Source: Octopus sinensis
Taxonomy: Eukaryota
Direction of reading: 5' to 3'
Length of the DNA: 64,000 nucleotides
NCBI RefSeq assembly: GCF_006345805.1
Contig: NC_042999.1
Location: 4,526,001-4,590,000, forward strand
Of the stretch, positions 4,385 to 63,072 are shown piece after piece. The translations under genes and the position numbers were made by a program. Within the stretch, counting starts at the first letter, position 1; each line of letters begins with the position of its first letter. The notes under the pieces were generated by a model. The model did no database searches, had not been told where the DNA came from, and was given only the letters and a program-made list of their open reading frames with translations.

Positions 4385-5760
<1,376 letters not shown>

Positions 5761-27582: not shown

Positions 27583-27609
27583 TCAGACTTTCTTGGCAAG
27601 AATAACATT
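27583..27609 (-). CDS. CHCHD3: MIC19 terminal coding exon G (NVILAKKV*)
   Basis: Strong acceptor tttttttttctttcttcAG, phase 0. The short tail before TGA is comparable in length to the CHCHD3 C-terminal tail. Confidence 0.85.
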   Translation of the reverse strand, partial: NVILAKKV

Positions 27610-30213: not shown

Positions 30214-30349
30214 TTGTCTTGCTTGGTCGACAGCTGTAGCAAAGGCATGAACTTCCGCTGAGCAGTTAAGTGGGTGAGACTGATTGGTGCGATAGCATTC
30301 CAATACCTTCAGCTGGAGATCTTCGCAGACAGGAGCCTCAACATGTTTT
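30214..30349 (-). CDS. CHCHD3: MIC19 coding exon F, 136 nt, phase 2 to 0, CHCH domain
   Basis: Acceptor tttgtcaattacAG and donor GTaagt. Translates to KHVEAPVCEDLQLKVLECYRTNQSHPLNCSAEVHAFATAVDQARQ, resembling CHCHD3 PVCADLQAKILQCYRENTHQTLKCSALATQYMHCV. Confidence 0.95.
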
Positions 30350-32582: not shown

Positions 32583-32653
32583 AGGAATTTGTTTTCTACT
32601 TCTTCCACTGCTTTTGCAAATTCTTGCCTTGTGGCAGTATTCATCTTTGTACT
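32583..32653 (-). CDS. CHCHD3: MIC19 coding exon E, 71 nt, phase 0 to 2
   Basis: Acceptor ccgtgttccAG and donor GTgagt. Translates to STKMNTATRQEFAKAVEEVENKF(L), resembling CHCHD3 TTEQYQKAAEEVEAKF. Confidence 0.92.
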
Positions 32654-33965
32654 CTGGAACACGGAATATAAGGTGAAAGAGAAATGGAAATTTGAGAAAC
32701 TATTGTCCTTGGGAATACAGAACAGAAATATCATACAAGTTTACAAAGGAAAAGGTTTGGTAATTTCAAAGATTTTACATAACTGTCGTGGATACATTGT
32801 TTGGTCATCTCAGCAGCTTGGTCTAATACAAGATTTATGTTGAGGCAACTGATCTATTATTAAGAATATCGTCAACATCACTGGAAACATATGGGGCAGT
32901 TCATTGAGGTGGATTTTCTGCAGCCAGGTGCTCTTCCAGTCACCAACAATAACTGGTTTCCAAGCAAGGAAATATTTTTCCATGGCCAGAGATAAAGGAA
33001 ACTGCTTGTATGGCAGTGATGCTCATTTACAGCTTTTGCACAGTGTCAGGACAAGGCCACACACAGGTACATATGATTGTGTGTGTGTGGGTATACATAC
33101 ACACACATCATCATTTAACATCTGCTTTCCATGCTGGCATGGGTTGGACGGTTTGACAGAGGGCTGGCGAACCAGATGGCTGCACCAGGCTTCAGTCTGA
33201 TCTGGCAGAGTTTCTACAGCTGGATGCCCTTCCTAACGCCAACCACTCCAAGAGTGTAGTGGCTGCTTTTACGTGCCACCGGCACGAGGGCTAGTCAGGC
33301 GGTACTGGCAATGGTCACACGCAAATGGTGTTTTTTATGTGCCACTTGCACAGATGCCAGTCTAGCAGCACTGGCAACAACCTTGCTCGAATGTTGTTTT
33401 CATGTGCCACTGGCACAAGTGCCAGTATGGTGACACTGGTAACGATCACACGCGAATGGTATTCCATCTACCAAATCCACTCACAAGACTTTGGTTGGCC
33501 AATGACCATAGAAAACCTTGTCCAAGATACCCAAGGTGTCGTGCAGTGGGACTGAACCCAAAATCATGGGGTTGGAAAGCAAACTTCCTAACCACACAAC
33601 CATGCCTGTGCCTCTGTTAGAAAAACTGTAATTCAAAACTCTGGGCAGACAAACAACTTATTTCTTTTCCTGTGAAGCCTTCCATGGCTTAGTGGTTAGG
33701 GTATTCCAGTTCACAATTGTAAGGTTGTGAATTCAATTCCCAGTGAGAACTACATTAAAGGTGTGCATGTCTGTGGAGTACTCATCCACTTGCACATTAA
33801 TTTCATGAGCAGGCTGTTTTATTGATAAGATCAGCTGGAACCCTCAACGTTGTAACCGCCTTCACAAGTCTGTTTAGCTAAATGGCAAAACCAATGAATA
33901 ACTCATATTTTAAAACACTAAACAATTTTTAGTTTTAAAAGAAAAAAAAATTGAAAATCACAAAC

Positions 33966-34139
33966 CTGGAGTTGCAGAGATTGCATTTTATCTTGGTAAA
34001 ATTCTTCAATGGATCTGAAAGCTTTTTCTCGCTCCACATAAATTTCGTTCATTTGTTTATAAATATGATTTCGTTCCATGGCAATCAATTCCTTCTCCTT
34101 GCTTTCGGCCTCAACAGCTGGAGCAAGAACTTCTGGCGG
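33966..34139 (-). CDS. CHCHD3: MIC19 coding exon D, 174 nt, phase 0-0, coiled coil
   Basis: Acceptor ttcctggtAG and donor GTttgt. Translates to PPEVLAPAVEAESKEKELIAMERNHIYKQMNEIYVEREKAFRSIEEFYQDKMQSLQLQ. The FRSIEEFYQDKMQSL segment aligns with CHCHD3 LKKQDAFYKEQLARL. Confidence 0.9.
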
Positions 34140-41339: not shown

Positions 41340-43368
41340 ATCATCATCATCATCATCGTTTAGCGTCCGTTTTCCATGCTAGCATGGGTTGGACGGTTCT
41401 ACTGGGGTCTGTGAAGCCAGAAGGCTTCATCAGGCCCAGTCAAATCTGGCAGTGTTTCTACGGCTGGATGCCCTTCCTAACGCCAACCACTCCGTGAGTG
41501 TAGTGGGTGCTTTTTACGTGCCACCCGCACTGGTGCCAGACAGAGCTGGCAAACGGCCATGAACGGATGGTGCTTTTATGTGCCACCGGCACGAGGGCCA
41601 GGCGAGGCTGGCAACGGACACGAAACGGGGCGGTGCTGGCAACGGTCGCGAAACGGAAAGTTCTCTTACATGCCACCGGCACTGGTAACACATCTGCAAT
41701 TTCCATTGATCGATTTCCATTGATCGATTTTGATTCTGATCGTCACTTGCCTCAACGGGTCTTCACAAGCAGAGTTTTGACATGCCACCGGCACTGGTAG
41801 CACATCCGCAATTTCCATTGATCGATTTCGATTCTGATCCTCACTTGCCTCATCACGTCTTCACAAGTAGAGTTTTGTGTCCCAAGAAGGGAAGGTATGC
41901 ATACGTAGGCTGGCTCCATCCCATGTAGAAGGCCACGGGTTATGGACTCACTTGTCCTGCCGGGTCTTCTCGCGCACAGCACACTTCCAGAGGTCTCGGT
42001 CTCTAGTCATTTCCTCAGTGAGACCTAAAGTTCGAAGGTCGTGCTTCACCACCTCGTCCCAGGTTTTCCTGGGTCTGCCTCTTCCACAGGTTCCCTCCAC
42101 CGCTAGGGTGTGGCACTTTTTCACACAACTATCTTCATCCATTCTCGCCACATGACCATACCAGCGCAAACGTCTCTCTTGCACACCACAACTGATGCTT
42201 CTTAGGTCCAGCTTTTCTCTCAAGGTACTTACACTCTGCCGAGTGTGAGTACCGGCATTACACATCCATCGGAGCATACTGGCTTCATTTCTAGCGAGCT
42301 TACGCATATCCTCAGCAGTCACGGCCCATGTTTCACTGCCATGTAGCATGGCTGTTCGTACACACGCATCATACAGTCTGCCTTTCACTCTGTGCGAGAG
42401 GCCTTTTGTCACCAGTAGAGGTAAGAGCTCTCTGAACTTTGCCCAAGCTATTCTTACTCTAGCAGTTACACTTTCAGCACACCCGCCCCCGCTGCTGACT
42501 TGGTCACCTAGGTAACGGAAACTATCAACTATTTCTAGTTTTTCTCCCTGGAAAGTGACGGAAGTTGGTCTCTCAGAGCATTTTCAGTGTTTATTGTTCC
42601 TGAGCATCTGCCACATACAAAAACCATCTTCCTAGTTAGCTTTCCTTTGACATTGCTGCATCTCTTATGTGTCCATAGCTTACACTTGGTGCATCTTATA
42701 GAGTTTCTACCTACACCTTTTCTACAGATCGAGCAGGGCCATCTACCTGAAGGTGTTTGTGATTGTCTACCTTCCTACTGATTACGACTTTGGTTTTAGC
42801 TAGATTGACTCTGAGGCCCTTCGATTCTAATCCTTGTTTCCACACCTGAAACTTCTCCTCCAGTTCTGATAGCGACTCAGCAATTAGAGCAAGGTCATCA
42901 GCATAGAGGAGCTCCCAAGGGCATCTTGTCTTGAATTCCTCCGTTATTGCCTGGAGGACTATGATAAATAGGAGGGGGCTGAGTACTGAGCCTTGGTGGA
43001 CTCCTACCTCTACCCGGAATTCTTCACTGTACACATTTCCAACCCTCACCCTACTAGCAGCGTCCCTGTACATGGCTTGCACAGCTCTCACTAACCATTC
43101 ATCTATCCCTAGTTTCCTCATTGCCCACCAGATAAGGGATCGGGGGACCCTGTCGAAGGCTTTCTCCATGTCAACAAAAGCCAGGTACAGGGGCTTATCT
43201 TTGGCTAGGTATTTCTCCTGCAGCTGCCTTACCAGGAATATAGCATCAGTAGTACTTTTCCCTGGCACAAACCCAAACTGCATCTCATCTAAACTAACTC
43301 TCTCTCTAATTAGTTGGGCTATGACCCTCTCCGTAACCTTCATCACCTGGTCCAACAGCTTGATGCCT
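41340..43368 (-). mobile_element. 5'-truncated, comparatively young RTE-clade LINE (RT, PHD-like finger, 3' UTR, (GAT)n tail)
   Basis: ORFs 42711-43421 (QFGFVPGKSTTDAIF, FVDMEKAFD, GVHQGSVLSP, LLYADD) and 41948-42412 (LHGSETW, RRLRWYGHV, GRGRPRKTW). About two frameshifts. Confidence 0.95.
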
Positions 43369-43744
43369 CTATATATATATATACACACACACACACACAT
43401 TAAGGCAATTAATTCCCCCAAATTACTAGGTATTGAACCAGTATTTCCTTGGATGAAACTACCTCTTCATGAGGTTAACACAACCTCTTAACCGAATATG
43501 TGTCTGTGTATATATACGTATAGATATATATTTATGTGTATGTATATATATATATATACATATACGTGTGTGTGTGTGTGTATATAATATATATATACAC
43601 ACACACACATGTATATACATGTATATATGTGGTGCACCTGAGCACTGTATACAATAATTTAATTATCATGTATATATATGTATATATATATATATACATA
43701 TGTATATACATATGATATACATATATATACATGTATATGTATAT

Positions 43745-44305: not shown

Positions 44306-44343
<38 letters not shown>

Positions 44344-44586
44344 CATAAAGTATATATATATATGTATGTATGGAGTATAAATATATATATATATATATAT
44401 ATAGGTGTGTATGAGTCAAAATATATAATATATATATATTATCTATATATATAGTGTGTGTATTATTATATATGGTATGGTGATGGATATGATTTATATA
44501 TGTGTGTATATAATATGGGGAGATATAATAAATAATATATATATGTGTGTGTGTATGAGTATAATAATATATATATATATGTGTAG

Positions 44587-44620
<34 letters not shown>

Positions 44621-45179
44621 TATATATATATAGATATATGTATGAGTATAAATTATATATTATATATATATATATATAGGTATGAGTATAAATATTATAT
44701 ATATATATATATATATATGTATGAGTATAAATATATATATATATATATATATATGAGTAATATTAAATATATATATATATATGTATGAGTATAAATATAT
44801 ATATATATATATGTATGAGTATAATAATATATATATATATATATGTATGGAGATAAATATATATTATATATATAGATGTATGAGTATAAAATATATGATT
44901 ATATATATATATATATGTATGAGTATAAATATATAGTATATATTATGAGTATGAATATAAATATTATATTATATATATATATATATATGAGTTAAACTAT
45001 ATATATATATTATATATATGTATGAGTATAAATATATTATATATATATATTATGTATGAGTATATAATATATATATAATATATATATATGTATGAGTATA
45101 AATATATATATATATATATATATATGTATGAGTATAAAATATATTATATCTATATATATATATATATTATATGTATGAG

Positions 45180-45221
<42 letters not shown>

Positions 45222-45500
45222 ATATATATTATATATATATATATATATATGTATGAGTATAAATATATATATATTAGATATATATATAATGGCGGTGCCC
45301 CAGCATGGCCACAGCTCATAAGCTGAAAATGGAATCAATCATATATATATATATATGTATGAGTTAAAGATATAATATATATATATATATATATATTATA
45401 TAATATATATATGTATGAGTATAAAATATATATATAATTATATATATATGTATGAGTATAAAATATATATATATATATATTATATATATATATATATATA
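44300..45500. repeat. (TA)n-based compound minisatellite with recurring TATGAGTATAAAT anchor
   Basis: More than 20 copies of the anchor separated by variable (TA)n tracts. Confidence 0.9.
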
Positions 45501-45762
45501 TAATTAAATGCAGGTTTTATTCAAATGTTTTATACTTCCCACATCCATTTCAAAGAAAACATTGGTTTTATTGCTGAGGGGATAAAATGATGTAAAACAA
45601 TGTAATCATCTTGTCAGGGAAAAAAGGGAAACAAAACACATCAAGAAGCCATTTTAACCGAATGTGATTACCACGTACATGATGAAGGGATCGCTGGAAA
45701 GTTATTTTTTAAAAAACTGTTAATGGATTTAATATCAAAGGCAATTCAGAGACAGAGGTTTC

Positions 45763-53056: not shown

Positions 53057-53091
<35 letters not shown>

Positions 53092-53130
53092 TATATATAC
53101 ATATACACACACACACACACACACATATAT

Positions 53131-53161
<31 letters not shown>

Positions 53162-54029
53162 TACATATACACACACACACACATATATACATATACACAC
53201 ACACACACACATATACATATACACACACACACACACATATATACATACACACACACACATATATACATACACACACACACATATATACATATACACACAC
53301 ACATATATATATACACACACACACACACACATACATATACACACACACATATATACATATACACACACACACATATATATATACACACACACACATATAT
53401 ACATATACACACACACACATATATACATATACACACACACACATATATACATACACACACACACATATATACATACCACACACACACACACTATACATAT
53501 ACACACACACACACATATATATACACACACACACATATATACATATACACACACACACACATATATACATATACACACACACACACATATATACATATAC
53601 ACACACACACACATATATACATATACACACCACACACATATATACATATACACACACACACATATATACATATACACACACACACATATATACATATACA
53701 CACACACACATATATACATATACACACACACATATATACATATACACACACACACACATATATACATATACACACACACACATATACATATACACACACA
53801 ACATATATACATATACACACACACATATACATATACACACACACCACATATATATACATATACACACACACACATATATACATATACACACACACACATA
53901 TATACATATACACACACACACATATATACATATACACACACACACATATATACATATACACACACACACACATATACATATACACACACACATATATACA
54001 TATACACACACACACACACATATACATAT

Positions 54030-54060
<31 letters not shown>

Positions 54061-54551
54061 TATATATACACACACATATATATATACATACACACACATA
54101 TATACATATATACACACACACATATATACATATATACACACACACATATATACATATATACACACACACATATATACATATACACATACATATATACATA
54201 TACACATACATATATACATATATATACACACACACACACATATATATATATACATACACACACATATATACATATACACACATATATACATATACACACA
54301 CACATATACATATACACACACACACATATATACACACACACATATATACACACACACATATATCACACACACACATATTATACACACACACACAACACAT
54401 ATACACACACACACACATATATACACACACACACACACCACACACATATATACACACACACACATATTATACACACACACACCACATATATACACACACC
54501 ACACACATATATACCACACACACATATATATACACACACACACATATATAT

Positions 54552-54604
<53 letters not shown>

Positions 54605-54699
54605 CCACATATATACACACACACACACCACATATATACATACCACACACATATATACACACACACACACACATATATACACACACACACCACATATAT

Positions 54700-54739
<40 letters not shown>

Positions 54740-56739: not shown

Positions 56740-57706
56740 GACTTCTTTCAGTTTCTGTCTACCAAATCCACTCACAAGGCTTTGGCCAGCCTGAGGTTAT
56801 AGTAGAAGACACTTGCCCAAGGTGCCTCGCAGTGGGACTGAACCCAGGACCATGTGGCTGGGAAGCAAGCTTCTAACCACACAGCCACACCAGCACCAAC
56901 AAAAGGATGAAGATTCTTCCCAAGTCATATAAAGGCAAAGACCCAGTTTCCTGATTTGTATGGCAAATCTATTTCCCCCAGATGGGATGCTAGTCTGTTG
57001 CAAGTTTGAGTGGACTGGAGCAAAGTGAAATGAAGAGTTTTGCTCAAGAACACAATGTGTCACCTGGTCCAGGAATTGAAACCACACTCTTACGATCAGG
57101 AGTCCAACACCCTAACCACCAAGCTACAGTAATCAAGTAGAAAGGAAAAAATTACTTGAAACTGCCCCATCCGTGAACTCTACATCCTTTTAATACATTT
57201 CGGTACCATTAAATTGGTAACACACATTTTCCAAAATTCAGAAGACTGAGATTAGAATTTGATGGTAGAACAACTATACCTCGATAGGTCCCACCAGGTA
57301 AAGAAATTGAAATATGAGGACATAATAAACAAGGACCATGTCAAGAGCCGGCATGTGGCCTCTACATACAAGAAGAGCATCCAGCCACAAGGAACATGCC
57401 AAAGAAGACACTGGAACAAACTGCAGGCCTTGGGCCCATTGGGTCCTGCTAAACCATCCAACCCAGGCCAGCAGGGGAAATAGACACTAAATGATAAATA
57501 CTACAATTTGTAGCTCTGCCTTCGAATCTTAAAAACCCATAGTGTTTGTTCGTAACGGAAAACTACAGATGGAGAAAGTATGAAATATTCTGTAACAAAT
57601 AAACTGCTGTTTTGATTATTTTTATTTTGAATGTTAGAAATTTTATGAAGCCAAACCAGACATGCAAAAGTGGGAGGAAAAAAAAAAAAATGGGAAAATA
57701 TCTTAC

Positions 57707-59053
57707 CTCAATCTTGGGAGCAGCAGGAGTAGGGGTCAAAGGTTGTACGATAGAAGAAGTAGAAATTTTAGGACCAGGAATATCTTCCTTAGGAGAAGGT
57801 TCCTCAACTGAAGGCTCAGCTGGTTCTGGAACAGAAAGAGCAGCTGCTGCTGCTGCTGGGGCTGGGGCTGCCAAAATACTCTCTTCTTTGGCAGCTTCTT
57901 TCTGTGGGAGTTTTTCCTCTTCAGAACTCAGCGCCAGAGCTGCTGGTATGCTCTCCATTTCAGTTTCTTCCTGTGGAAGTTTCTCCAATACCACTGCTGG
58001 AATAATTTCTTTCTCAGCAGCTTCTTTAGGGGCAATTTCCTCTGGAATTGCCAAAACACTTTCTTCCTGCTTGGTTTCATTGGGTAGGACTGTTTCCACC
58101 TCAGGACTCAGCACTGCTGAAATACCCTCGACTTTTTCAAGTTCTTTTGGCAGAGCTTCTTCTACTTTTGAACTTAATTCTGGTGTAACAGAAATAACCT
58201 CGATCTTTTCAAGTTCTGTTGGTGGGGCCTCTTCCACCTTCAAACTCAATTCTGGTGTTGCTGAAATAACCTCAATCTTTTCGAGTTCTTTAGGTGGGGC
58301 TTCCTCCACCTTCAAACTCAATTCTGGGGTTGCAGAAATACTTTCAATCTTTTCAAGTTCTTTTGGCAGACCTTCCTCCACCTTCAAACTTAATTCTGGT
58401 GTAACAGAAATAACCTCAATCTTTTCAAGTTCTTTAGGTGGGGCTTCCTCCACCTTCAAACTCAATTCTGGGGTTGCTGAAATAACCTCAATCTTTTCGA
58501 GTTCTTTAGGTGGGGCTTCCTCCACCTTCAAACTCAATATTGGGGTTGCAGAAATACTTTCAATCTTTTCAAGTTCTTTCGGTGGGGCATCCTCCACCTT
58601 CAAACTCAATTCTGGTATAACAGAAATACTCTCAATCTTTTCAAGTTCTTTTGGTGGGGCTTCCTCCACCTTCAAACTTAATTCTGGTATAACAGGAATA
58701 CTCTCAATCTTTTCAAGTTCTTTTGGTGGAGCTTCTTCCACCTTCAAACTCAATTCTGGTATAACAGAAACACCCTCAACCTTTTCAAGTTCTTTTGGTG
58801 GGGCTTCCTCCACCTTGGAACTCAATACTGGTGTTGCTGAAATACCTTCGATCTTTTCAAGTTCTTTTGGTAGGGTTTCCTCCACCTTTAAACCCAACAC
58901 CGGAATTGTCGAAATATCCACTTTCTTCTCAGGTTCCGTGGGTTGGGTTTCTTCTACCTTGGAACTCAACACTGGGGCCTCTTCCTTTCTCTCACTTTCA
59001 ACAGGTTTTTCTTTTTCCTTGGAAAGCAAATCAAATTTAGTAGTGGAACTGTA
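57707..59053 (-). CDS. CHCHD3: MIC19 coding exon C, 1347 nt (449 codons), symmetric phase 0-0, with 24-aa PEVK-like tandem repeats; probable cassette exon
   Basis: Acceptor catattacAG and donor GTaaga. Stop-free frame YSSTTKFDLL...PAAPKIE lies within ORF 57563-59080. Length is divisible by 3. Confidence 0.75.
58112..58969 (-). repeat. Coding minisatellite: 12 units of 72 bp (24 aa, consensus LSLKVEEAPPKELEKIEVISATPE); last unit 66 bp
   Basis: Units counted in the translation and checked against nucleotide spacing (unit 1 starts at 58969, unit 12 at 58177). Confidence 0.95.
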
Positions 59054-59823
59054 CTGTAATATGATTTGAACATGTAACACACATTGTTAATCATCTCCTA
59101 CACCCCACCATACTTACATGCAACCTCCACCCAGCCACACTCCTAGTCCATCACCCCCCACACATTTCTACCCCACCCCCTCTACTTTGACACCTCATCA
59201 CCACTATTTTTTCATCTATTTCCACCTCCACCCCAGTTACTCCTACACTCACTTCTAAAATGTGAGTAGTCATGTAGTTCCTCAACAGCAAGAAACCTGT
59301 TCTGCTCTGGGCCCTTGCCCCATAATTTAACCCCTCCATCTCCAAGCATAAAGCCACCTTTCTAAGGTTCAGAGTCTTGGAAGCTGCATGGCAACATCAC
59401 TAGTCCTGGTGATACAAAACAAGCACCTAATACACAATGCGTGTTACATGTATCAGCATGTATCAGTGGAAGTACACGAGAATATACAGTTACATCCTTT
59501 GTAGTCTTTCTGTAAAATAGTTGGCATTAGGAAGGGCACCCAGCCATAGAAATCATATCAAACCAGACATTGGAGCACGATGCGGTCCTTGGCCCACTGA
59601 ATCCGGTCAAACCATCCAACTCGTGGCAGCATGGAATATGGACACGAAATAATAATTACTCCAATTTGTAGCTCTGCTTCATATCTTAAAGACAGTGCCT
59701 CCTGTTCATAATGGAAAACTAGAGATGGAAAAAATATGAAATACTCTATAAGAAATAAACAGCAGAAGCTAAAGCAAACAAGCAACAAAAATTAATTTTA
59801 AAAAAAGCCAGAAAATATCTTAC

Positions 59824-60524
59824 CTCAATCTTGGGAGCAGCAGGACTGGGGATCAAAGGTTGTAACATAGAAGAAGAAGGGATTTTAGGACCAGGAATAA
59901 CTTTCTTAGGAGAAGGTTTTGGAGTTGGAGATTCAGCTGGTTCTGAAATAGAAGGAGCTGTTGTTGCTGCTTTTGCTTTCGTTGGGGTACTTTTTTCCTT
60001 GGCAGCTTCTTCCACTTTAGCCTTCTTTTCAGTTTCTTTCTGTGGGGTCTTTTCCGCTGGTTCTGCCGCGATACTATCTTTAGGGGCAGTTTTATCTACT
60101 TTGGAACTTAAGACTGGAGAAGTTGAAACACACTCTTTCTTTTCAGATTCTTTGGGTGCGATTGCCTTAGAACCCAGCACTGCTGGAAGACCCAATTTCT
60201 TTTCAGGTTCTTTGGGTGCAAGTTTTTCCACTTTAGGGCTCAACACAGCAGCCTCTTCCTTGCTTTTACTGTCAACAGGCTTCTGTTCTTTTTCCTTGGA
60301 AAGCAAATCAGGTTTAGTAACAGGAGAAATAGGGGATTTTTTAGGAGAACCAGGAACAGGGATAGTGGGCGAAGGCGGTAAAATAGGAGTAGCAGGGATA
60401 ACGGGTATAACTGGGAAACTCGGTACCGGTAATTGAGGTTTCTCTGGTGGTGCTTCTACTGCAGGGGCTTTACGCTTGTCTTCAACAATCACCTTTCTTT
60501 TTAGTGGTTCATTGCTCTTGGTAA
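59824..60524 (-). CDS. CHCHD3: MIC19 coding exon B, 701 nt, phase 1 to 0, Pro-rich/PEVK-like low-complexity insert
   Basis: Acceptor ctttctctatttgtAG and donor GTaaga. Open frame VTKSNEPLKRK...PAAPKIE lies within ORF 59746-60612 and is in phase with exon A. Confidence 0.8.
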
Positions 60525-61896: not shown

Positions 61897-61948
61897 CTTT
61901 GGGTTTTTCCTTGATGCCATAAATCTGCTTGGCAACGGAATCCGAAAC
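61897..61948 (-). CDS. CHCHD3: MIC19/MIC25 (CHCHD3/6 family) internal coding exon A, 52 nt, phase 0 to 1
   Basis: Acceptor ttctctttgttttAG and donor GTaaac. Translates to VSDSVAKQIYGIKEKPK, resembling the N-terminal LSENVIDRM motif of vertebrate CHCHD3. Its phase matches the next exon. The start-codon exon is not in the window. Confidence 0.8.
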
Positions 61949-62749: not shown

Positions 62750-63072
62750 ATACGCTACACTGCACATTTATTTAACCTGACCAGATCTGCCAGTGCCGCT
62801 AGACTGGCTCCTGTGCAGGTGACATGTAAAAAAATACCATTTGAGCATGGCCGTTGCCAGTACCACCTGACTGGCCCTCGTGCCGGTGACACGTAAAAAA
62901 CACCCACTACACTCTCGGAGTGGTTGGCATTAGGAAGGGCATCCAGCTGTAGAAACTCAGCCAGATCAAGATTGGAGCCTGATGCAGCCACCTGGTTCGC
63001 CAGTCTTCAGTCAAATCGTCCAACCCATGCTAGCATGGAAAGCAGACATTAAACAATGATGATGATGATGAG
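62750..63072 (+). mobile_element. RTE-LINE 3' tail copy (one of at least 12 in the window)
   Basis: aaagcacccactacactc..ggcattaggaagggcatccagctgtagaaac..ccaacccatgctagcatggaaag..(GAT)n. Other copies at about 20760, 22730, 25000, 25360, 26830, 30380, 33105, 46625, 50285, 57350 and 59510. Confidence 0.85.

What the first reader, a model, noticed from the sequence alone, without database searches (positions are those of the whole stretch)
58112..58969. In-frame 72-bp coding repeat array with a 216-bp higher-order duplication
Seen: twelve 24-aa units. Units 6-7-8 (SISAT, VISAT, VISVT) recur as units 9-10-11 with shared diagnostic bases (actttcaatc, tcgagttctttagg, ggtgtaacagaaataacctc), which indicates a recent three-unit duplication. 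Terminal units are more diverged than central ones, and no unit has a frameshift or stop. Inference: the array is evolving by unequal crossover under selection for an open frame, so copy number may be polymorphic.
Basis: partly seen in the sequence, partly recalled or inferred. Interest (0 to 1): 0.7.

Follow-up and report, generated by a model that had tools for sequence, protein, structure and literature searches.

The report
Coding 24-residue repeat in MIC19-like gene
The repeat is real: twelve in-frame 72-base units, the middle three duplicated as a block, lie on the minus strand in a duplicated exon of an animal gene for the mitochondrial cristae protein MIC19 and were kept readable by selection, which makes this an ordinary kind of coding repeat in an unusual host gene.

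Summary
Observation confirmed. Window 58112-58975 holds twelve head-to-tail 72-bp units with no indel or stop. They code on the minus strand (consensus PELSLKVEEAPPKELEKIEGISAT). Units 6-7-8 and 9-10-11 are sister pairs (7, 3 and 5 mismatches), and units 1, 2 and 12 are the most diverged.

The array is not a free-standing gene. It fills a 1347-nt exon ("B", 59053-57707). Exon B has an AG acceptor, a GT donor and phase 0 at both ends. It is a diverged tandem copy of the 3' two-thirds of the upstream exon "A" plus about 290 bp of intron. Both exons lie in the variable linker of a MIC19/CHCHD3-family gene (Pfam DUF1690 above threshold, Cys-helix C-terminus).

Selection on the reading frame is supported. 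pN/pS among units is 0.27, against 0.8-0.9 in the off-frames. Between the two 216-bp copies there are 9 synonymous and 6 non-synonymous changes (P=0.002). Exon indels are multiples of 3, whereas most intron indels are not.

"Recent" is only relative: the two block copies differ by 7% (pS 0.19), at least as much as orthologous exons of the closest sampled species (pS 0.10-0.12). That species' mRNA joins exon A directly to the next exon, so inclusion of exon B is unproven and probably alternative. Copy-number polymorphism could not be tested. Likely role: a long acidic spacer in the MIC19 tether (inference).

The parts
58112..58975 (-). Array of twelve in-frame 72-bp (24-aa) units, consensus PELSLKVEEAPPKELEKIEGISAT; net charge -33
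   Evidence: TRF. Unit table and mismatch matrix. Composition.
58400..58615 (-). Copy 1 of the 216-bp higher-order block (units 6, 7, 8)
   Evidence: It differs from copy 2 at 15/216 sites.
58184..58399 (-). Copy 2 of the 216-bp higher-order block (units 9, 10, 11)
   Evidence: Same calls as copy 1. Sister pairs (6,9), (7,10) and (8,11) in the NJ tree. pS 0.188 and pN 0.036 between the copies.
57707..59053 (-). Exon B: 1347 nt = 449 codons. Acceptor ttacag|TAC, donor GAG|gtaaga, phase 0 at both ends. Holds the array plus about 135 residues of degenerate E/K/P-rich tail; net charge -52.
   Evidence: Boundaries and phases. Homology to the linker exon of P0001. Paralogy with exon A.
59824..60524 (-). 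Exon A: 701 nt, phase 1 to 0. Orthologue of the single linker exon in the related-species mRNA L001. Holds 2-3 degenerate copies of the same motif; net charge +13.
59531..59823 (-). Intron segment after exon A that was duplicated together with the exon
   Evidence: About 80% identical to 57372-57706. Gap lengths are mostly not multiples of 3.
57372..57706 (-). Intron segment after exon B, the paralogue of 59531-59823
61897..61948 (-). Upstream coding exon (VSDSVAKQIYGIKEKPK) of the same gene; its donor leaves phase 1
   Evidence: 98% identical to L001.
33966..34139 (-). Exon E5, start of the conserved DUF1690/MIC19 domain; acceptor in phase 0
32583..32653 (-). Exon E6 of the conserved domain
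30214..30349 (-). Exon E7, the Cys-helix (CHCH-like) part
   Evidence: Best PDB sequence match is the Mic19 CHCH domain of 7pv0.
27583..27609 (-). Last coding exon (NVILAKKV, then stop)

Best explanation
The array is a real, minus-strand, protein-coding tandem repeat of twelve 24-residue units. It makes up two-thirds of a 449-codon exon (B) in the variable linker of a MIC19/CHCHD3-family gene of an animal genome.

Its history, as read from the sequence:
1. The ancestral linker exon (today's exon A) already held 2-3 degenerate copies of a 20-24-aa motif, PVLSSKVE..APKEPEKK.
2. A tandem segmental duplication copied the 3' two-thirds of that exon plus at least 290 bp of the following intron. An AG at the junction serves as a new phase-0 acceptor.
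3. In the new copy one motif was amplified to a 72-bp array by unequal exchange or replication slippage.
4. Last, a block of three units (6-7-8) was duplicated to give units 9-10-11.

Since these events the units have diverged mostly at synonymous sites, and indels have stayed in frame. The exon has therefore been translated and kept under purifying selection.

Exon B is symmetric (phase 0 to 0), so it can be included after exon A or skipped without changing the frame. The mRNA of the closest sampled species skips any such exon. I therefore infer an alternatively included cassette exon.

Inferred function: a long, strongly acidic, proline-punctuated and probably disordered spacer. It would be inserted between the N-terminal segment of MIC19, which contacts the outer membrane and SAM50, and its C-terminal domain, which binds MIC60. 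It would change the length and the charge of the linker (from +13 to about -39) in the tether across the intermembrane space.

Shown: the anatomy, the duplication history, the coding constraint and the family of the host gene. Inferred: inclusion in mRNA, disorder and the spacer role.
For: Repeat anatomy.

Higher-order block: offset-3 mismatches are 5, 7, 3 and 5, against 9.5-10.4 at other offsets. Permutation P=0.003. NJ sister pairs (6,9), (7,10), (8,11)..

Coding strand and gene:
- The minus-strand translation matches the linker exon of P0001.
- tblastn and hand-checked splice sites give a consistent seven-exon model with canonical AG/GT sites and matching phases.
- The C-terminal 135 aa hit Pfam DUF1690 at 33.9 bits (cut-off 29.7) and MIC19_MIC25 below threshold.
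- The best PDB sequence match is the Mic19 CHCH domain in 7pv0, E=0.18.
- Homologues P0002-4 start MGASGS or MGATNS, as N-myristoylated MIC19 does (PMC6235283).

Exon duplication: A 60319-59531 matches B 59042-57372. Identity is about 80% in both the exon and the intron part. Exon gaps are 9 and 3 nt. Intron gaps are 2, 8, 38, 4, 1, 1, 2, 3, 4, 2, 3, 2 and 13 nt..

Selection:
- Differences from the consensus by codon position are 14/32/56.
- pN/pS is 0.27 in the frame, against 0.81-0.87 in the other two minus-strand frames.
- The block copies have pS 0.188 and pN 0.036, binomial P=0.0018.

Not an assembly artefact: all twelve units are distinct, and the longest exact repeat is 66 bp.

Cassette reading: length 1347 = 3 x 449 with phase 0 at both ends. 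L001 joins exon A directly to E5.

Roles of the MIC19 domains: PMC13293838, bioRxiv 10.1101/345959.
Against: - No transcript or protein containing exon B or anything like it was found. Searches covered 5.8 billion clustered proteins and 1.84 billion representatives (unrelated repeat proteins only). An exact look-up of the ORF also failed.
- The acceptor has a weak polypyrimidine tract, and the only related mRNA lacks the exon.
- A vs B in the 3' flank gives pN/pS 1.1. Outside the array there is thus no sign of amino-acid constraint, only of frame constraint.
- The codon-position signal is shared by the antisense frame (pN/pS 0.35), because the third positions coincide.
- AlphaFold2 without an alignment did not return a plain coil. 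It gave a low-confidence model (mean pLDDT 48.7) with one beta-hairpin per unit.
- Exon 1 lies outside the window, so the N-terminal myristoylation motif of this gene was not seen.
Confidence: 0.7

Rival explanations
1. Exon B is an unused duplicate (a pseudo-exon) inside an intron, and the array is a neutral intronic minisatellite that happens to be still open.
For: - The only related mRNA (L001) goes from exon A straight to E5.
- No protein with this exon exists in any database searched.
- The acceptor is weak.
- A vs B pN/pS is about 1.1 in the 3' flank.
Against: - 449 codons are open although the exon differs from exon A by about 20% at the nucleotide level, the same divergence as the adjoining intron, which is riddled with indels that are not multiples of 3.
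- pN/pS is 0.27 among units and 0.19 between the two block copies, against 0.8-0.9 in the off-frames.
- The donor GAG|gtaagatatttt is conserved, and a phase-0 AG sits exactly at the duplication junction.
Confidence: 0.13
2. The array is translated but folds into a regular repeat domain (a solenoid or stacked beta-hairpins with a 24-residue period) that binds a partner, rather than acting as a disordered spacer.
For: - Each unit alternates hydrophobic and polar residues (IEVISAT-PE-LSLKVE) and is followed by a charged loop.
- AlphaFold2 predicts one hairpin per unit, with pLDDT 53-71 in the array.
- Foldseek and HMMER both pull out 24-residue leucine-rich-repeat proteins.
Against: - Confidence is low: mean pLDDT 48.7, TM-scores 0.1-0.27, rmsd 7-17 A.
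- No Pfam LRR family matches at E up to 1.
- The Asn/Cys position of the LRR consensus is Ala or Thr.
- There are three prolines per unit and a net charge of -33 over 288 residues.
- The database hits are unrelated repeat proteins matched through 'KELEK'-type words.
Confidence: 0.1
3. The array, or its three-unit duplication, is an assembly artefact (a collapsed or expanded repeat).
For: Tandem repeats are error-prone in assemblies. No reads were available to check.
Against: - Every unit is unique, with at least 3 differences from any other.
- The two 216-bp copies differ at 15 sites.
- The longest exact repeat is 66 bp, shorter than ordinary reads.
- The differences follow a coding pattern, which assembly errors would not produce.
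Confidence: 0.03
4. The coding strand is the plus strand (ORF 57612-59069, 485 aa, Ser/Phe/Gly-rich).
For: An equally long ORF exists on the plus strand. Its pN/pS among units is 0.35.
Against: - That frame shares third codon positions with the minus-strand frame, so its low pN/pS is a by-product.
- It has no Pfam hit, no homologue and no splice context.
- The minus-strand frame is homologous to a transcribed MIC19 linker exon and has canonical splice sites in the right phase.
Confidence: 0.01

Closest known systems
Coding minisatellites / in-frame tandem-repeat arrays with higher-order structure in disordered protein regions (general class; established knowledge)
   Same: - Head-to-tail units whose length is a multiple of 3, with no frameshifts.
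- Edge units are more diverged than central ones.
- A multi-unit block duplication is present.
- Substitutions are biased to synonymous sites.
   Different: - The units are old and all distinct: the closest pair is 4% apart and the block copies 7% apart, so there is no sign of current homogenisation.
- Variability in length among individuals, the property usually used to define such loci, was not testable here.
MIC19 / CHCHD3 (MICOS subunit; Pfam DUF1690 and MIC19_MIC25)
   Same: - The host gene has the C-terminal coiled-coil plus Cys-helix domain (DUF1690 above the Pfam cut-off).
- Its best PDB sequence match is the Mic19 CHCH domain.
- Its homologues carry an MG..S N-terminus.
   Different: - Human CHCHD3 has the domain directly after the N-terminal segment (DUF737 at about residues 14-175 and CHCH at 176-217, PMC13293838). 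This gene has a 234-aa basic Pro/Lys-rich linker exon and, potentially, a further 449-aa acidic repeat exon.
- Only three cysteines are present (CX9C plus CX10C spacing) instead of twin CX9C.
PEVK-type elastic spacer of titin (28-residue PPAK motifs; from my own knowledge)
   Same: - Pro/Glu/Val/Lys-rich, low in aromatic residues and without Cys.
- Tandem units of 24-28 residues arose by exon or unit duplication.
- The plausible role is an extensible, unstructured spacer.
   Different: - There is no sequence homology.
- The P+E+V+K fraction is 57%, plus much Leu, Ile and Ser.
- The array is strongly acidic rather than mixed in charge.
- It is one large exon, not many small ones.
- It sits in a mitochondrial intermembrane-space protein, not a sarcomeric one.
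Leucine-rich repeats with a 24-residue period
   Same: Same period, and an L..I.V pattern in each unit. LRR proteins are the top matches of both HMMER and Foldseek.
   Different: - No Pfam LRR hit.
- The conserved Asn/Cys position is absent.
- The structural matches are poor (TM up to 0.27).

Membership tests
In-frame coding tandem-repeat array (coding minisatellite) | Head-to-tail copies of constant period that is a multiple of 3, without frameshift or stop | tested here: met
   Period 72, 0% indels, 12 units, open frame.
In-frame coding tandem-repeat array (coding minisatellite) | Lies in a translated exon (coding constraint visible) | tested here: met
   pN/pS is 0.27 against 0.8-0.9 in the off-frames. 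The block copies differ by 9 synonymous and 6 non-synonymous changes (P=0.002). The translation is homologous to a transcribed exon of a relative. Direct transcript evidence for this exon is lacking.
In-frame coding tandem-repeat array (coding minisatellite) | Copy number varies among individuals | not testable with these tools
   No reads or other individuals were available. The only related data are motif-scale in-frame indels in the paralogous exon A between two species.
Higher-order repeat (multi-unit period) | Units n apart are more alike than neighbours, over at least two copies of the block | tested here: met
   Mean mismatches at offset 3 are 5.0, against 9.5, 10.4 and 9.7 at offsets 1, 2 and 4 (units 5-11). 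Permutation P=0.003. NJ sister pairs. There are only two copies of the block.
MIC19 / CHCHD3 family (host gene) | DUF1690 / MIC19_MIC25 domain | tested here: met
   PF07956 scores 33.9 bits, above the cut-off of 29.7. PF05300 scores 19.8 bits, below its cut-off of 33. The same holds for P0001-4.
MIC19 / CHCHD3 family (host gene) | C-terminal CHCH fold with paired cysteine motifs | tested here: inconclusive
   The sequence has C-x9-C, then a third Cys 10 residues later; the fourth Cys position is Ala. The segment aligns to the Mic19 CHCH domain of 7pv0 only at E=0.18.
MIC19 / CHCHD3 family (host gene) | N-terminal Met-Gly myristoylation motif | not testable with these tools
   Exon 1 is outside the window. 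Homologues P0002-4 start MGASGS or MGATNS. The start of P0001 is an unreliable GTG call.
Alternatively spliced cassette exon | Canonical splice sites and symmetric phase, so that inclusion or skipping keeps the frame | tested here: met
   Acceptor ttacag|, donor |gtaaga, 1347 nt, phase 0 to 0. The exon A donor and the E5 acceptor are also in phase 0.
Alternatively spliced cassette exon | Both inclusion and skipping isoforms observed | not testable with these tools
   Only a skipping-type junction (A to E5) was seen, and in a related species. No inclusion isoform was found in any database.
Titin-type PEVK region | About 70% or more P+E+V+K, with 28-residue PPAK motifs | tested here: not met
   P+E+V+K is 57% in the array and 54% in exon B. 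The unit is 24 residues with no PPAK-like consensus. The 70% criterion is from my own knowledge.
Leucine-rich repeat | LxxLxLxxN/CxL core recognised by LRR profiles | tested here: not met
   No Pfam LRR family at E up to 1. The Asn/Cys position is Ala or Thr. Foldseek TM-scores are 0.27 or less, on a low-confidence model.

The most novel reading that the evidence does not exclude
A lineage-specific, alternatively included exon gives the MICOS subunit MIC19 a 449-residue, strongly acidic repeat module that changes linker charge from +13 to about -39. Tissues could use it to tune the reach or stiffness of the SAM50-MIC19-MIC60 bridge, and so the spacing of crista junctions. Alternatively, it could form a previously unseen 24-residue beta-hairpin repeat fold in the intermembrane space.
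Probability: 0.12. Interest if true: 0.6.

Novelty: new member of a known kind. Interest (0 to 1): 0.33.

Why it matters
As a repeat it is ordinary: many disordered protein regions grow by in-frame unit and block duplication.

Two things are worth keeping:
- It is a clean, datable example of how a linker grows. The steps were exon duplication, recruitment of an acceptor at the junction, unit amplification and block duplication. An internal control, the co-duplicated intron, shows that the frame was selected.
- The host is MIC19, whose linker connects the outer-membrane SAM50 contact to the inner-membrane MIC60 contact. A 449-residue acidic insert, if expressed, would be a natural experiment on how linker length and charge affect contact between the two mitochondrial membranes.

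Tried and rejected
- **Pfam on exons A and B:** no family; only sub-threshold noise.
- **Word-indexed search with exon B:** one hit, P0001, through the paralogous linker exon; nothing carries the array.
- **Exhaustive HMMER search of 1.84 billion representatives with exon B:** 44 hits. The five I fetched (the two best and the three other most identical) are unrelated repeat proteins: 12-aa repeats, coiled coils and bacterial 24-residue LRRs. I rejected them as homologues.
- **AlphaFold2 without an alignment, then Foldseek against the PDB:** the model has low confidence and the LRR matches are poor, so they were not used as evidence of fold.
- **Phage DNA collection:** no match.
- **Rfam and tRNA scans of the window:** nothing.
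- **Exact look-up of the exon-B ORF in public assemblies:** not on record.
- **Literature search for the run accession of L001, to name the species:** nothing. I could not identify the organism. The tools hold no eukaryotic genome collection, so orthologous loci in sister species could not be fetched.
- **Unit 8 as a clean crossover chimera of unit types 5 and 8:** rejected. Its differences from unit 11 are private to unit 11 and are not clustered on one side.
- **Codon-position bias as a test of strand:** rejected. The antisense frame shares third positions.
Full report

Yes. Tandem Repeats Finder reports one array of period 72 at 58115-58897, with 10.9 copies, 86% matches and 0% indels. Self-identity of 58112-58969 is 0.84 at offset 72 and about 0.3 at offsets a few bases away.

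The region is open on both strands. Read on the minus strand, it resolves into twelve 24-residue units from 58975 down to 58112, with consensus PELSLKVEEAPPKELEKIEGISAT. The sequence on either side no longer matches the unit (45-55 mismatches of 72).

**2. The higher-order duplication**

- Mismatches per 72 bp are 7 (units 6-9), 3 (7-10) and 5 (8-11).
- Among units 5-11 the mean is 5.0 at an offset of three units, against 9.5, 10.4 and 9.7 at offsets of 1, 2 and 4.
- The observed order gives the lowest possible offset-3 sum of all 5040 orderings (P=0.003).
- A neighbour-joining tree makes (6,9), (7,10) and (8,11) sister pairs. It groups units 3, 4 and 5 with 8 and 11 as one class.
- Pair 5-8 is also close (5 mismatches), so mismatch sums alone cannot fix the register.
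- Units 1, 2 and 12 are the most diverged.

**3. What the array sits in**

The only database protein that matched the minus-strand translation is P0001, a 402-aa product of a transcript contig (L001, Logan run SRR16213285). tblastn of P0001 on the window, followed by reading of the splice sites, gives a consistent minus-strand gene:

| Exon | Coordinates | Notes |
|---|---|---|
| E2 | 61948-61897 | donor leaves phase 1 |
| A | 60524-59824 | 701 nt, phase 1 to 0 |
| B | 59053-57707 | 1347 nt = 449 codons, ttacag\|TAC ... GAG\|gtaaga, phase 0 to 0 |
| E5 | 34139-33966 | acceptor in phase 0 |
| E6 | 32653-32583 | |
| E7 | 30349-30214 | |
| E8 | 27609-27583 | ends with the stop codon |

Exon 1 is outside the window.

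The C-terminal 135 residues hit Pfam DUF1690 at 33.9 bits (cut-off 29.7) and MIC19_MIC25 below threshold. Their best PDB sequence match is the Mic19 CHCH domain in the Mic60-Mic19 fusion 7pv0, a weak match at E=0.18. More distant homologues, P0002-4, begin MGASGS or MGATNS, the N-myristoylation context known for MIC19 (PMC6235283). The host gene is therefore a MIC19/CHCHD3-family gene of an animal genome. I could not name the species.

**4. Exon B is a diverged partial copy of exon A**

- A 60319-59531 aligns with B 59042-57372. That span covers the 3' two-thirds of the exon, the identical donor context GAG|gtaagatatttt, and about 290-335 bp of intron.
- Ungapped identity is about 0.78-0.83 in the exon parts and 0.80 in the intron part.
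- In the 3' exon part the gaps are 9 and 3 nt. In the intron they are 2, 8, 38, 4, 1, 1, 2, 3, 4, 2, 3, 2 and 13 nt.
- The co-duplicated intron thus acts as an internal neutral control. At the same divergence, only the exon kept its frame.
- Homology stops at the first codons of exon B. The AG used as acceptor lies just upstream, at the duplication junction, and is the only AG in phase 0 there.
- Exon A holds 2-3 degenerate copies of the same motif (AVLSPKVEKLAPKEPEKK..., PVLSSKVDKTAPK...). The 72-bp unit of exon B is therefore an amplified descendant of an older motif.

**5. Selection on the frame**

- Differences from the unit consensus fall 14/32/56 on codon positions 1/2/3.
- Nei-Gojobori pN/pS over all unit pairs is 0.27 (0.28 for units 3-11) in the minus-strand coding frame. 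It is 0.77-0.93 in the other two minus-strand frames.
- The antisense ORF gives 0.35-0.40, but only because its third positions coincide with those of the real frame. It has no homologue and no Pfam hit.
- The two 216-bp block copies differ by 9 synonymous and 6 non-synonymous changes over 48 and 168 sites: pS 0.188, pN 0.036, binomial P=0.0018.
- This is the best evidence that exon B has been translated since the last duplication.
- Outside the array the constraint is mostly on the frame rather than on residues. A vs B pN/pS is 1.1 in the 3' flank and 0.48 in the 5' flank.
- The two exons have opposite net charge: +13 for A and -52 for B.

**6. How old is it, and is it turning over?**

L001 is from a close relative:

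- Conserved exons are 96-100% identical and the 3'UTR is 96.7% identical.
- pS is 0.10 in E5-E8 and 0.12 in exon A.
- Exon A is its orthologue (93-97% identity locally). It differs by five in-frame indels of 21, 15, 15, 60 and 6 nt.
- The 60-nt indel is exactly one motif, flanked by the direct repeat GCACCCAAAGAAyCTGAAAAGAAA.
- The linker therefore does gain and lose motifs between species, and it evolves fast (pN/pS 0.46, against 0.10 in the conserved domain).

The array itself shows no sign of current homogenisation:

- The closest units differ at 3/72 sites.
- The block copies differ at 15/216 sites, with pS 0.19. That is at least as much as the two species differ.
- The longest exact repeat is 66 bp.
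- 'Recent' therefore holds only relative to the rest of the array.
- The A/B duplication is about 20% diverged in the intron and is probably older than the species split. The estimates rest on few sites.

**7. Is exon B used?**

This is unproven. Points in favour:

- The selection signature in section 5.
- Canonical splice sites and symmetric phase.

Points against, or cautions:

- L001 joins exon A directly to E5.
- No protein containing a B-like exon turned up in the searches of 5.8 billion clusters or 1.84 billion representatives.
- An exact look-up of the ORF failed.
- The acceptor has a poor pyrimidine tract.

The reading that fits all of this is a cassette exon that is included in some transcripts or tissues, or in this species only.

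**8. Likely function (inference)**

In MIC19 the N-terminal region contacts SAM50 of the outer membrane, and the C-terminal CHCH domain binds the mitofilin domain of MIC60 (bioRxiv 10.1101/345959; PMC13293838). The exon lies between these two parts.

Its product is 54% P+E+V+K, has 2 aromatic residues and no Cys in 449 residues, carries three prolines per unit and has a net charge of -52. Such a sequence is most simply an extended, disordered acidic spacer that lengthens and recharges the tether.

AlphaFold2 without an alignment gave a low-confidence model (mean pLDDT 48.7; 53-71 in the array) with one beta-hairpin per unit. Foldseek then found only poor LRR matches (TM 0.27 or less), and no Pfam LRR model matches. 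I keep a structured repeat fold as a minor rival.

**9. Comparison and novelty**

As a sequence feature this is a new member of a well-known kind: an in-frame tandem repeat with a block duplication in a disordered linker. It is not a PEVK region (composition and motif not met) and not an LRR.

I found no description of a MIC19 with such an insert; a search for CHCHD3 with 'octopus' returned one unrelated review. This is a host-gene curiosity rather than a new mechanism.

**10. Verdict**

Block duplication, unequal-exchange-type growth and selection for an open frame hold. 'Recent' and 'polymorphic' are not shown.
- No step needed to be referred.

Noticed in passing
window 20824, 22968, 25107, 30473, 33222, 41466, 46679, 50511, 59520, 62923 (core motif); fuller copy about 62790-63060: A SINE-like interspersed element (core GGATGCCCTTCCTAATGCCAAC) occurs 10 times in the window, against 0 expected. 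One copy lies in the intron segment duplicated with exon A (59520-59600). Its counterpart lies after exon B (about 57372-57460), and that is where A/B homology ends.
   Followed up: partly
window 42711-43421 (-), with the neighbouring ORF 41948-42412 (-): A reverse-transcriptase ORF (Pfam RVT_1, 110 bits) of a retrotransposon lies inside the 23.5-kb intron between exon B and E5. The neighbouring ORF has no Pfam hit.
   Followed up: partly
window 53069-54724; 44307-45502; 4385-4981: Very long compound microsatellites are present: (AC)n/(TA)n over 1.65 kb with a 24-bp super-period, and (TA)n of 1.2 kb and 0.6 kb. They produce many spurious long ORFs.
   Followed up: no
window 59824-60524 vs 57707-59053: The paralogous exons have opposite net charge: exon A +13 (Lys-rich) and exon B -52 (Glu-rich). 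Including exon B would flip the charge of the MIC19 linker.
   Followed up: partly
window 59824-60524 vs L001 123-808: Exon A differs from the related-species mRNA by in-frame indels of 21, 15, 15, 60 and 6 nt. The 60-nt one is one 20-aa motif flanked by a direct repeat of about 24 bp. The 15-nt 'KLPQK' segment missing from exon A is present in both L001 and exon B.
   Followed up: yes
L001 1-30: The 'M' start of P0001 is a GTG call with an in-frame TAG directly upstream, so the 5' end of that transcript contig and the N-terminus of P0001 are unreliable. Homologues P0002-4 start with MGASGS or MGATNS.
   Followed up: partly
window 30214-30349 (-): The CHCH-like region has only three cysteines (C-x9-C, then C after 10 more residues), and the fourth position is Ala. 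P0001-4 share this. The spacing resembles the fungal Mic19 CHCH domain in 7pv0.
   Followed up: partly
window 34129-34139 (-) vs L001 809-819: The first four codons of E5 differ completely between the window (PPEV) and the related mRNA (LAAA), although the rest of the exon is 96% identical.
   Followed up: no
window 57612-59069 (+): A 485-aa antisense ORF (Ser/Phe/Gly-rich) mirrors the array. It shares third codon positions with the real frame and so mimics a coding signal. It has no Pfam hit.
   Followed up: yes
window 33304-33460 and 41506-41624: Short tandem duplications of 62-65 bp (about 2 copies) lie within or next to SINE-like elements near exon E5 and near the retrotransposon.
   Followed up: no
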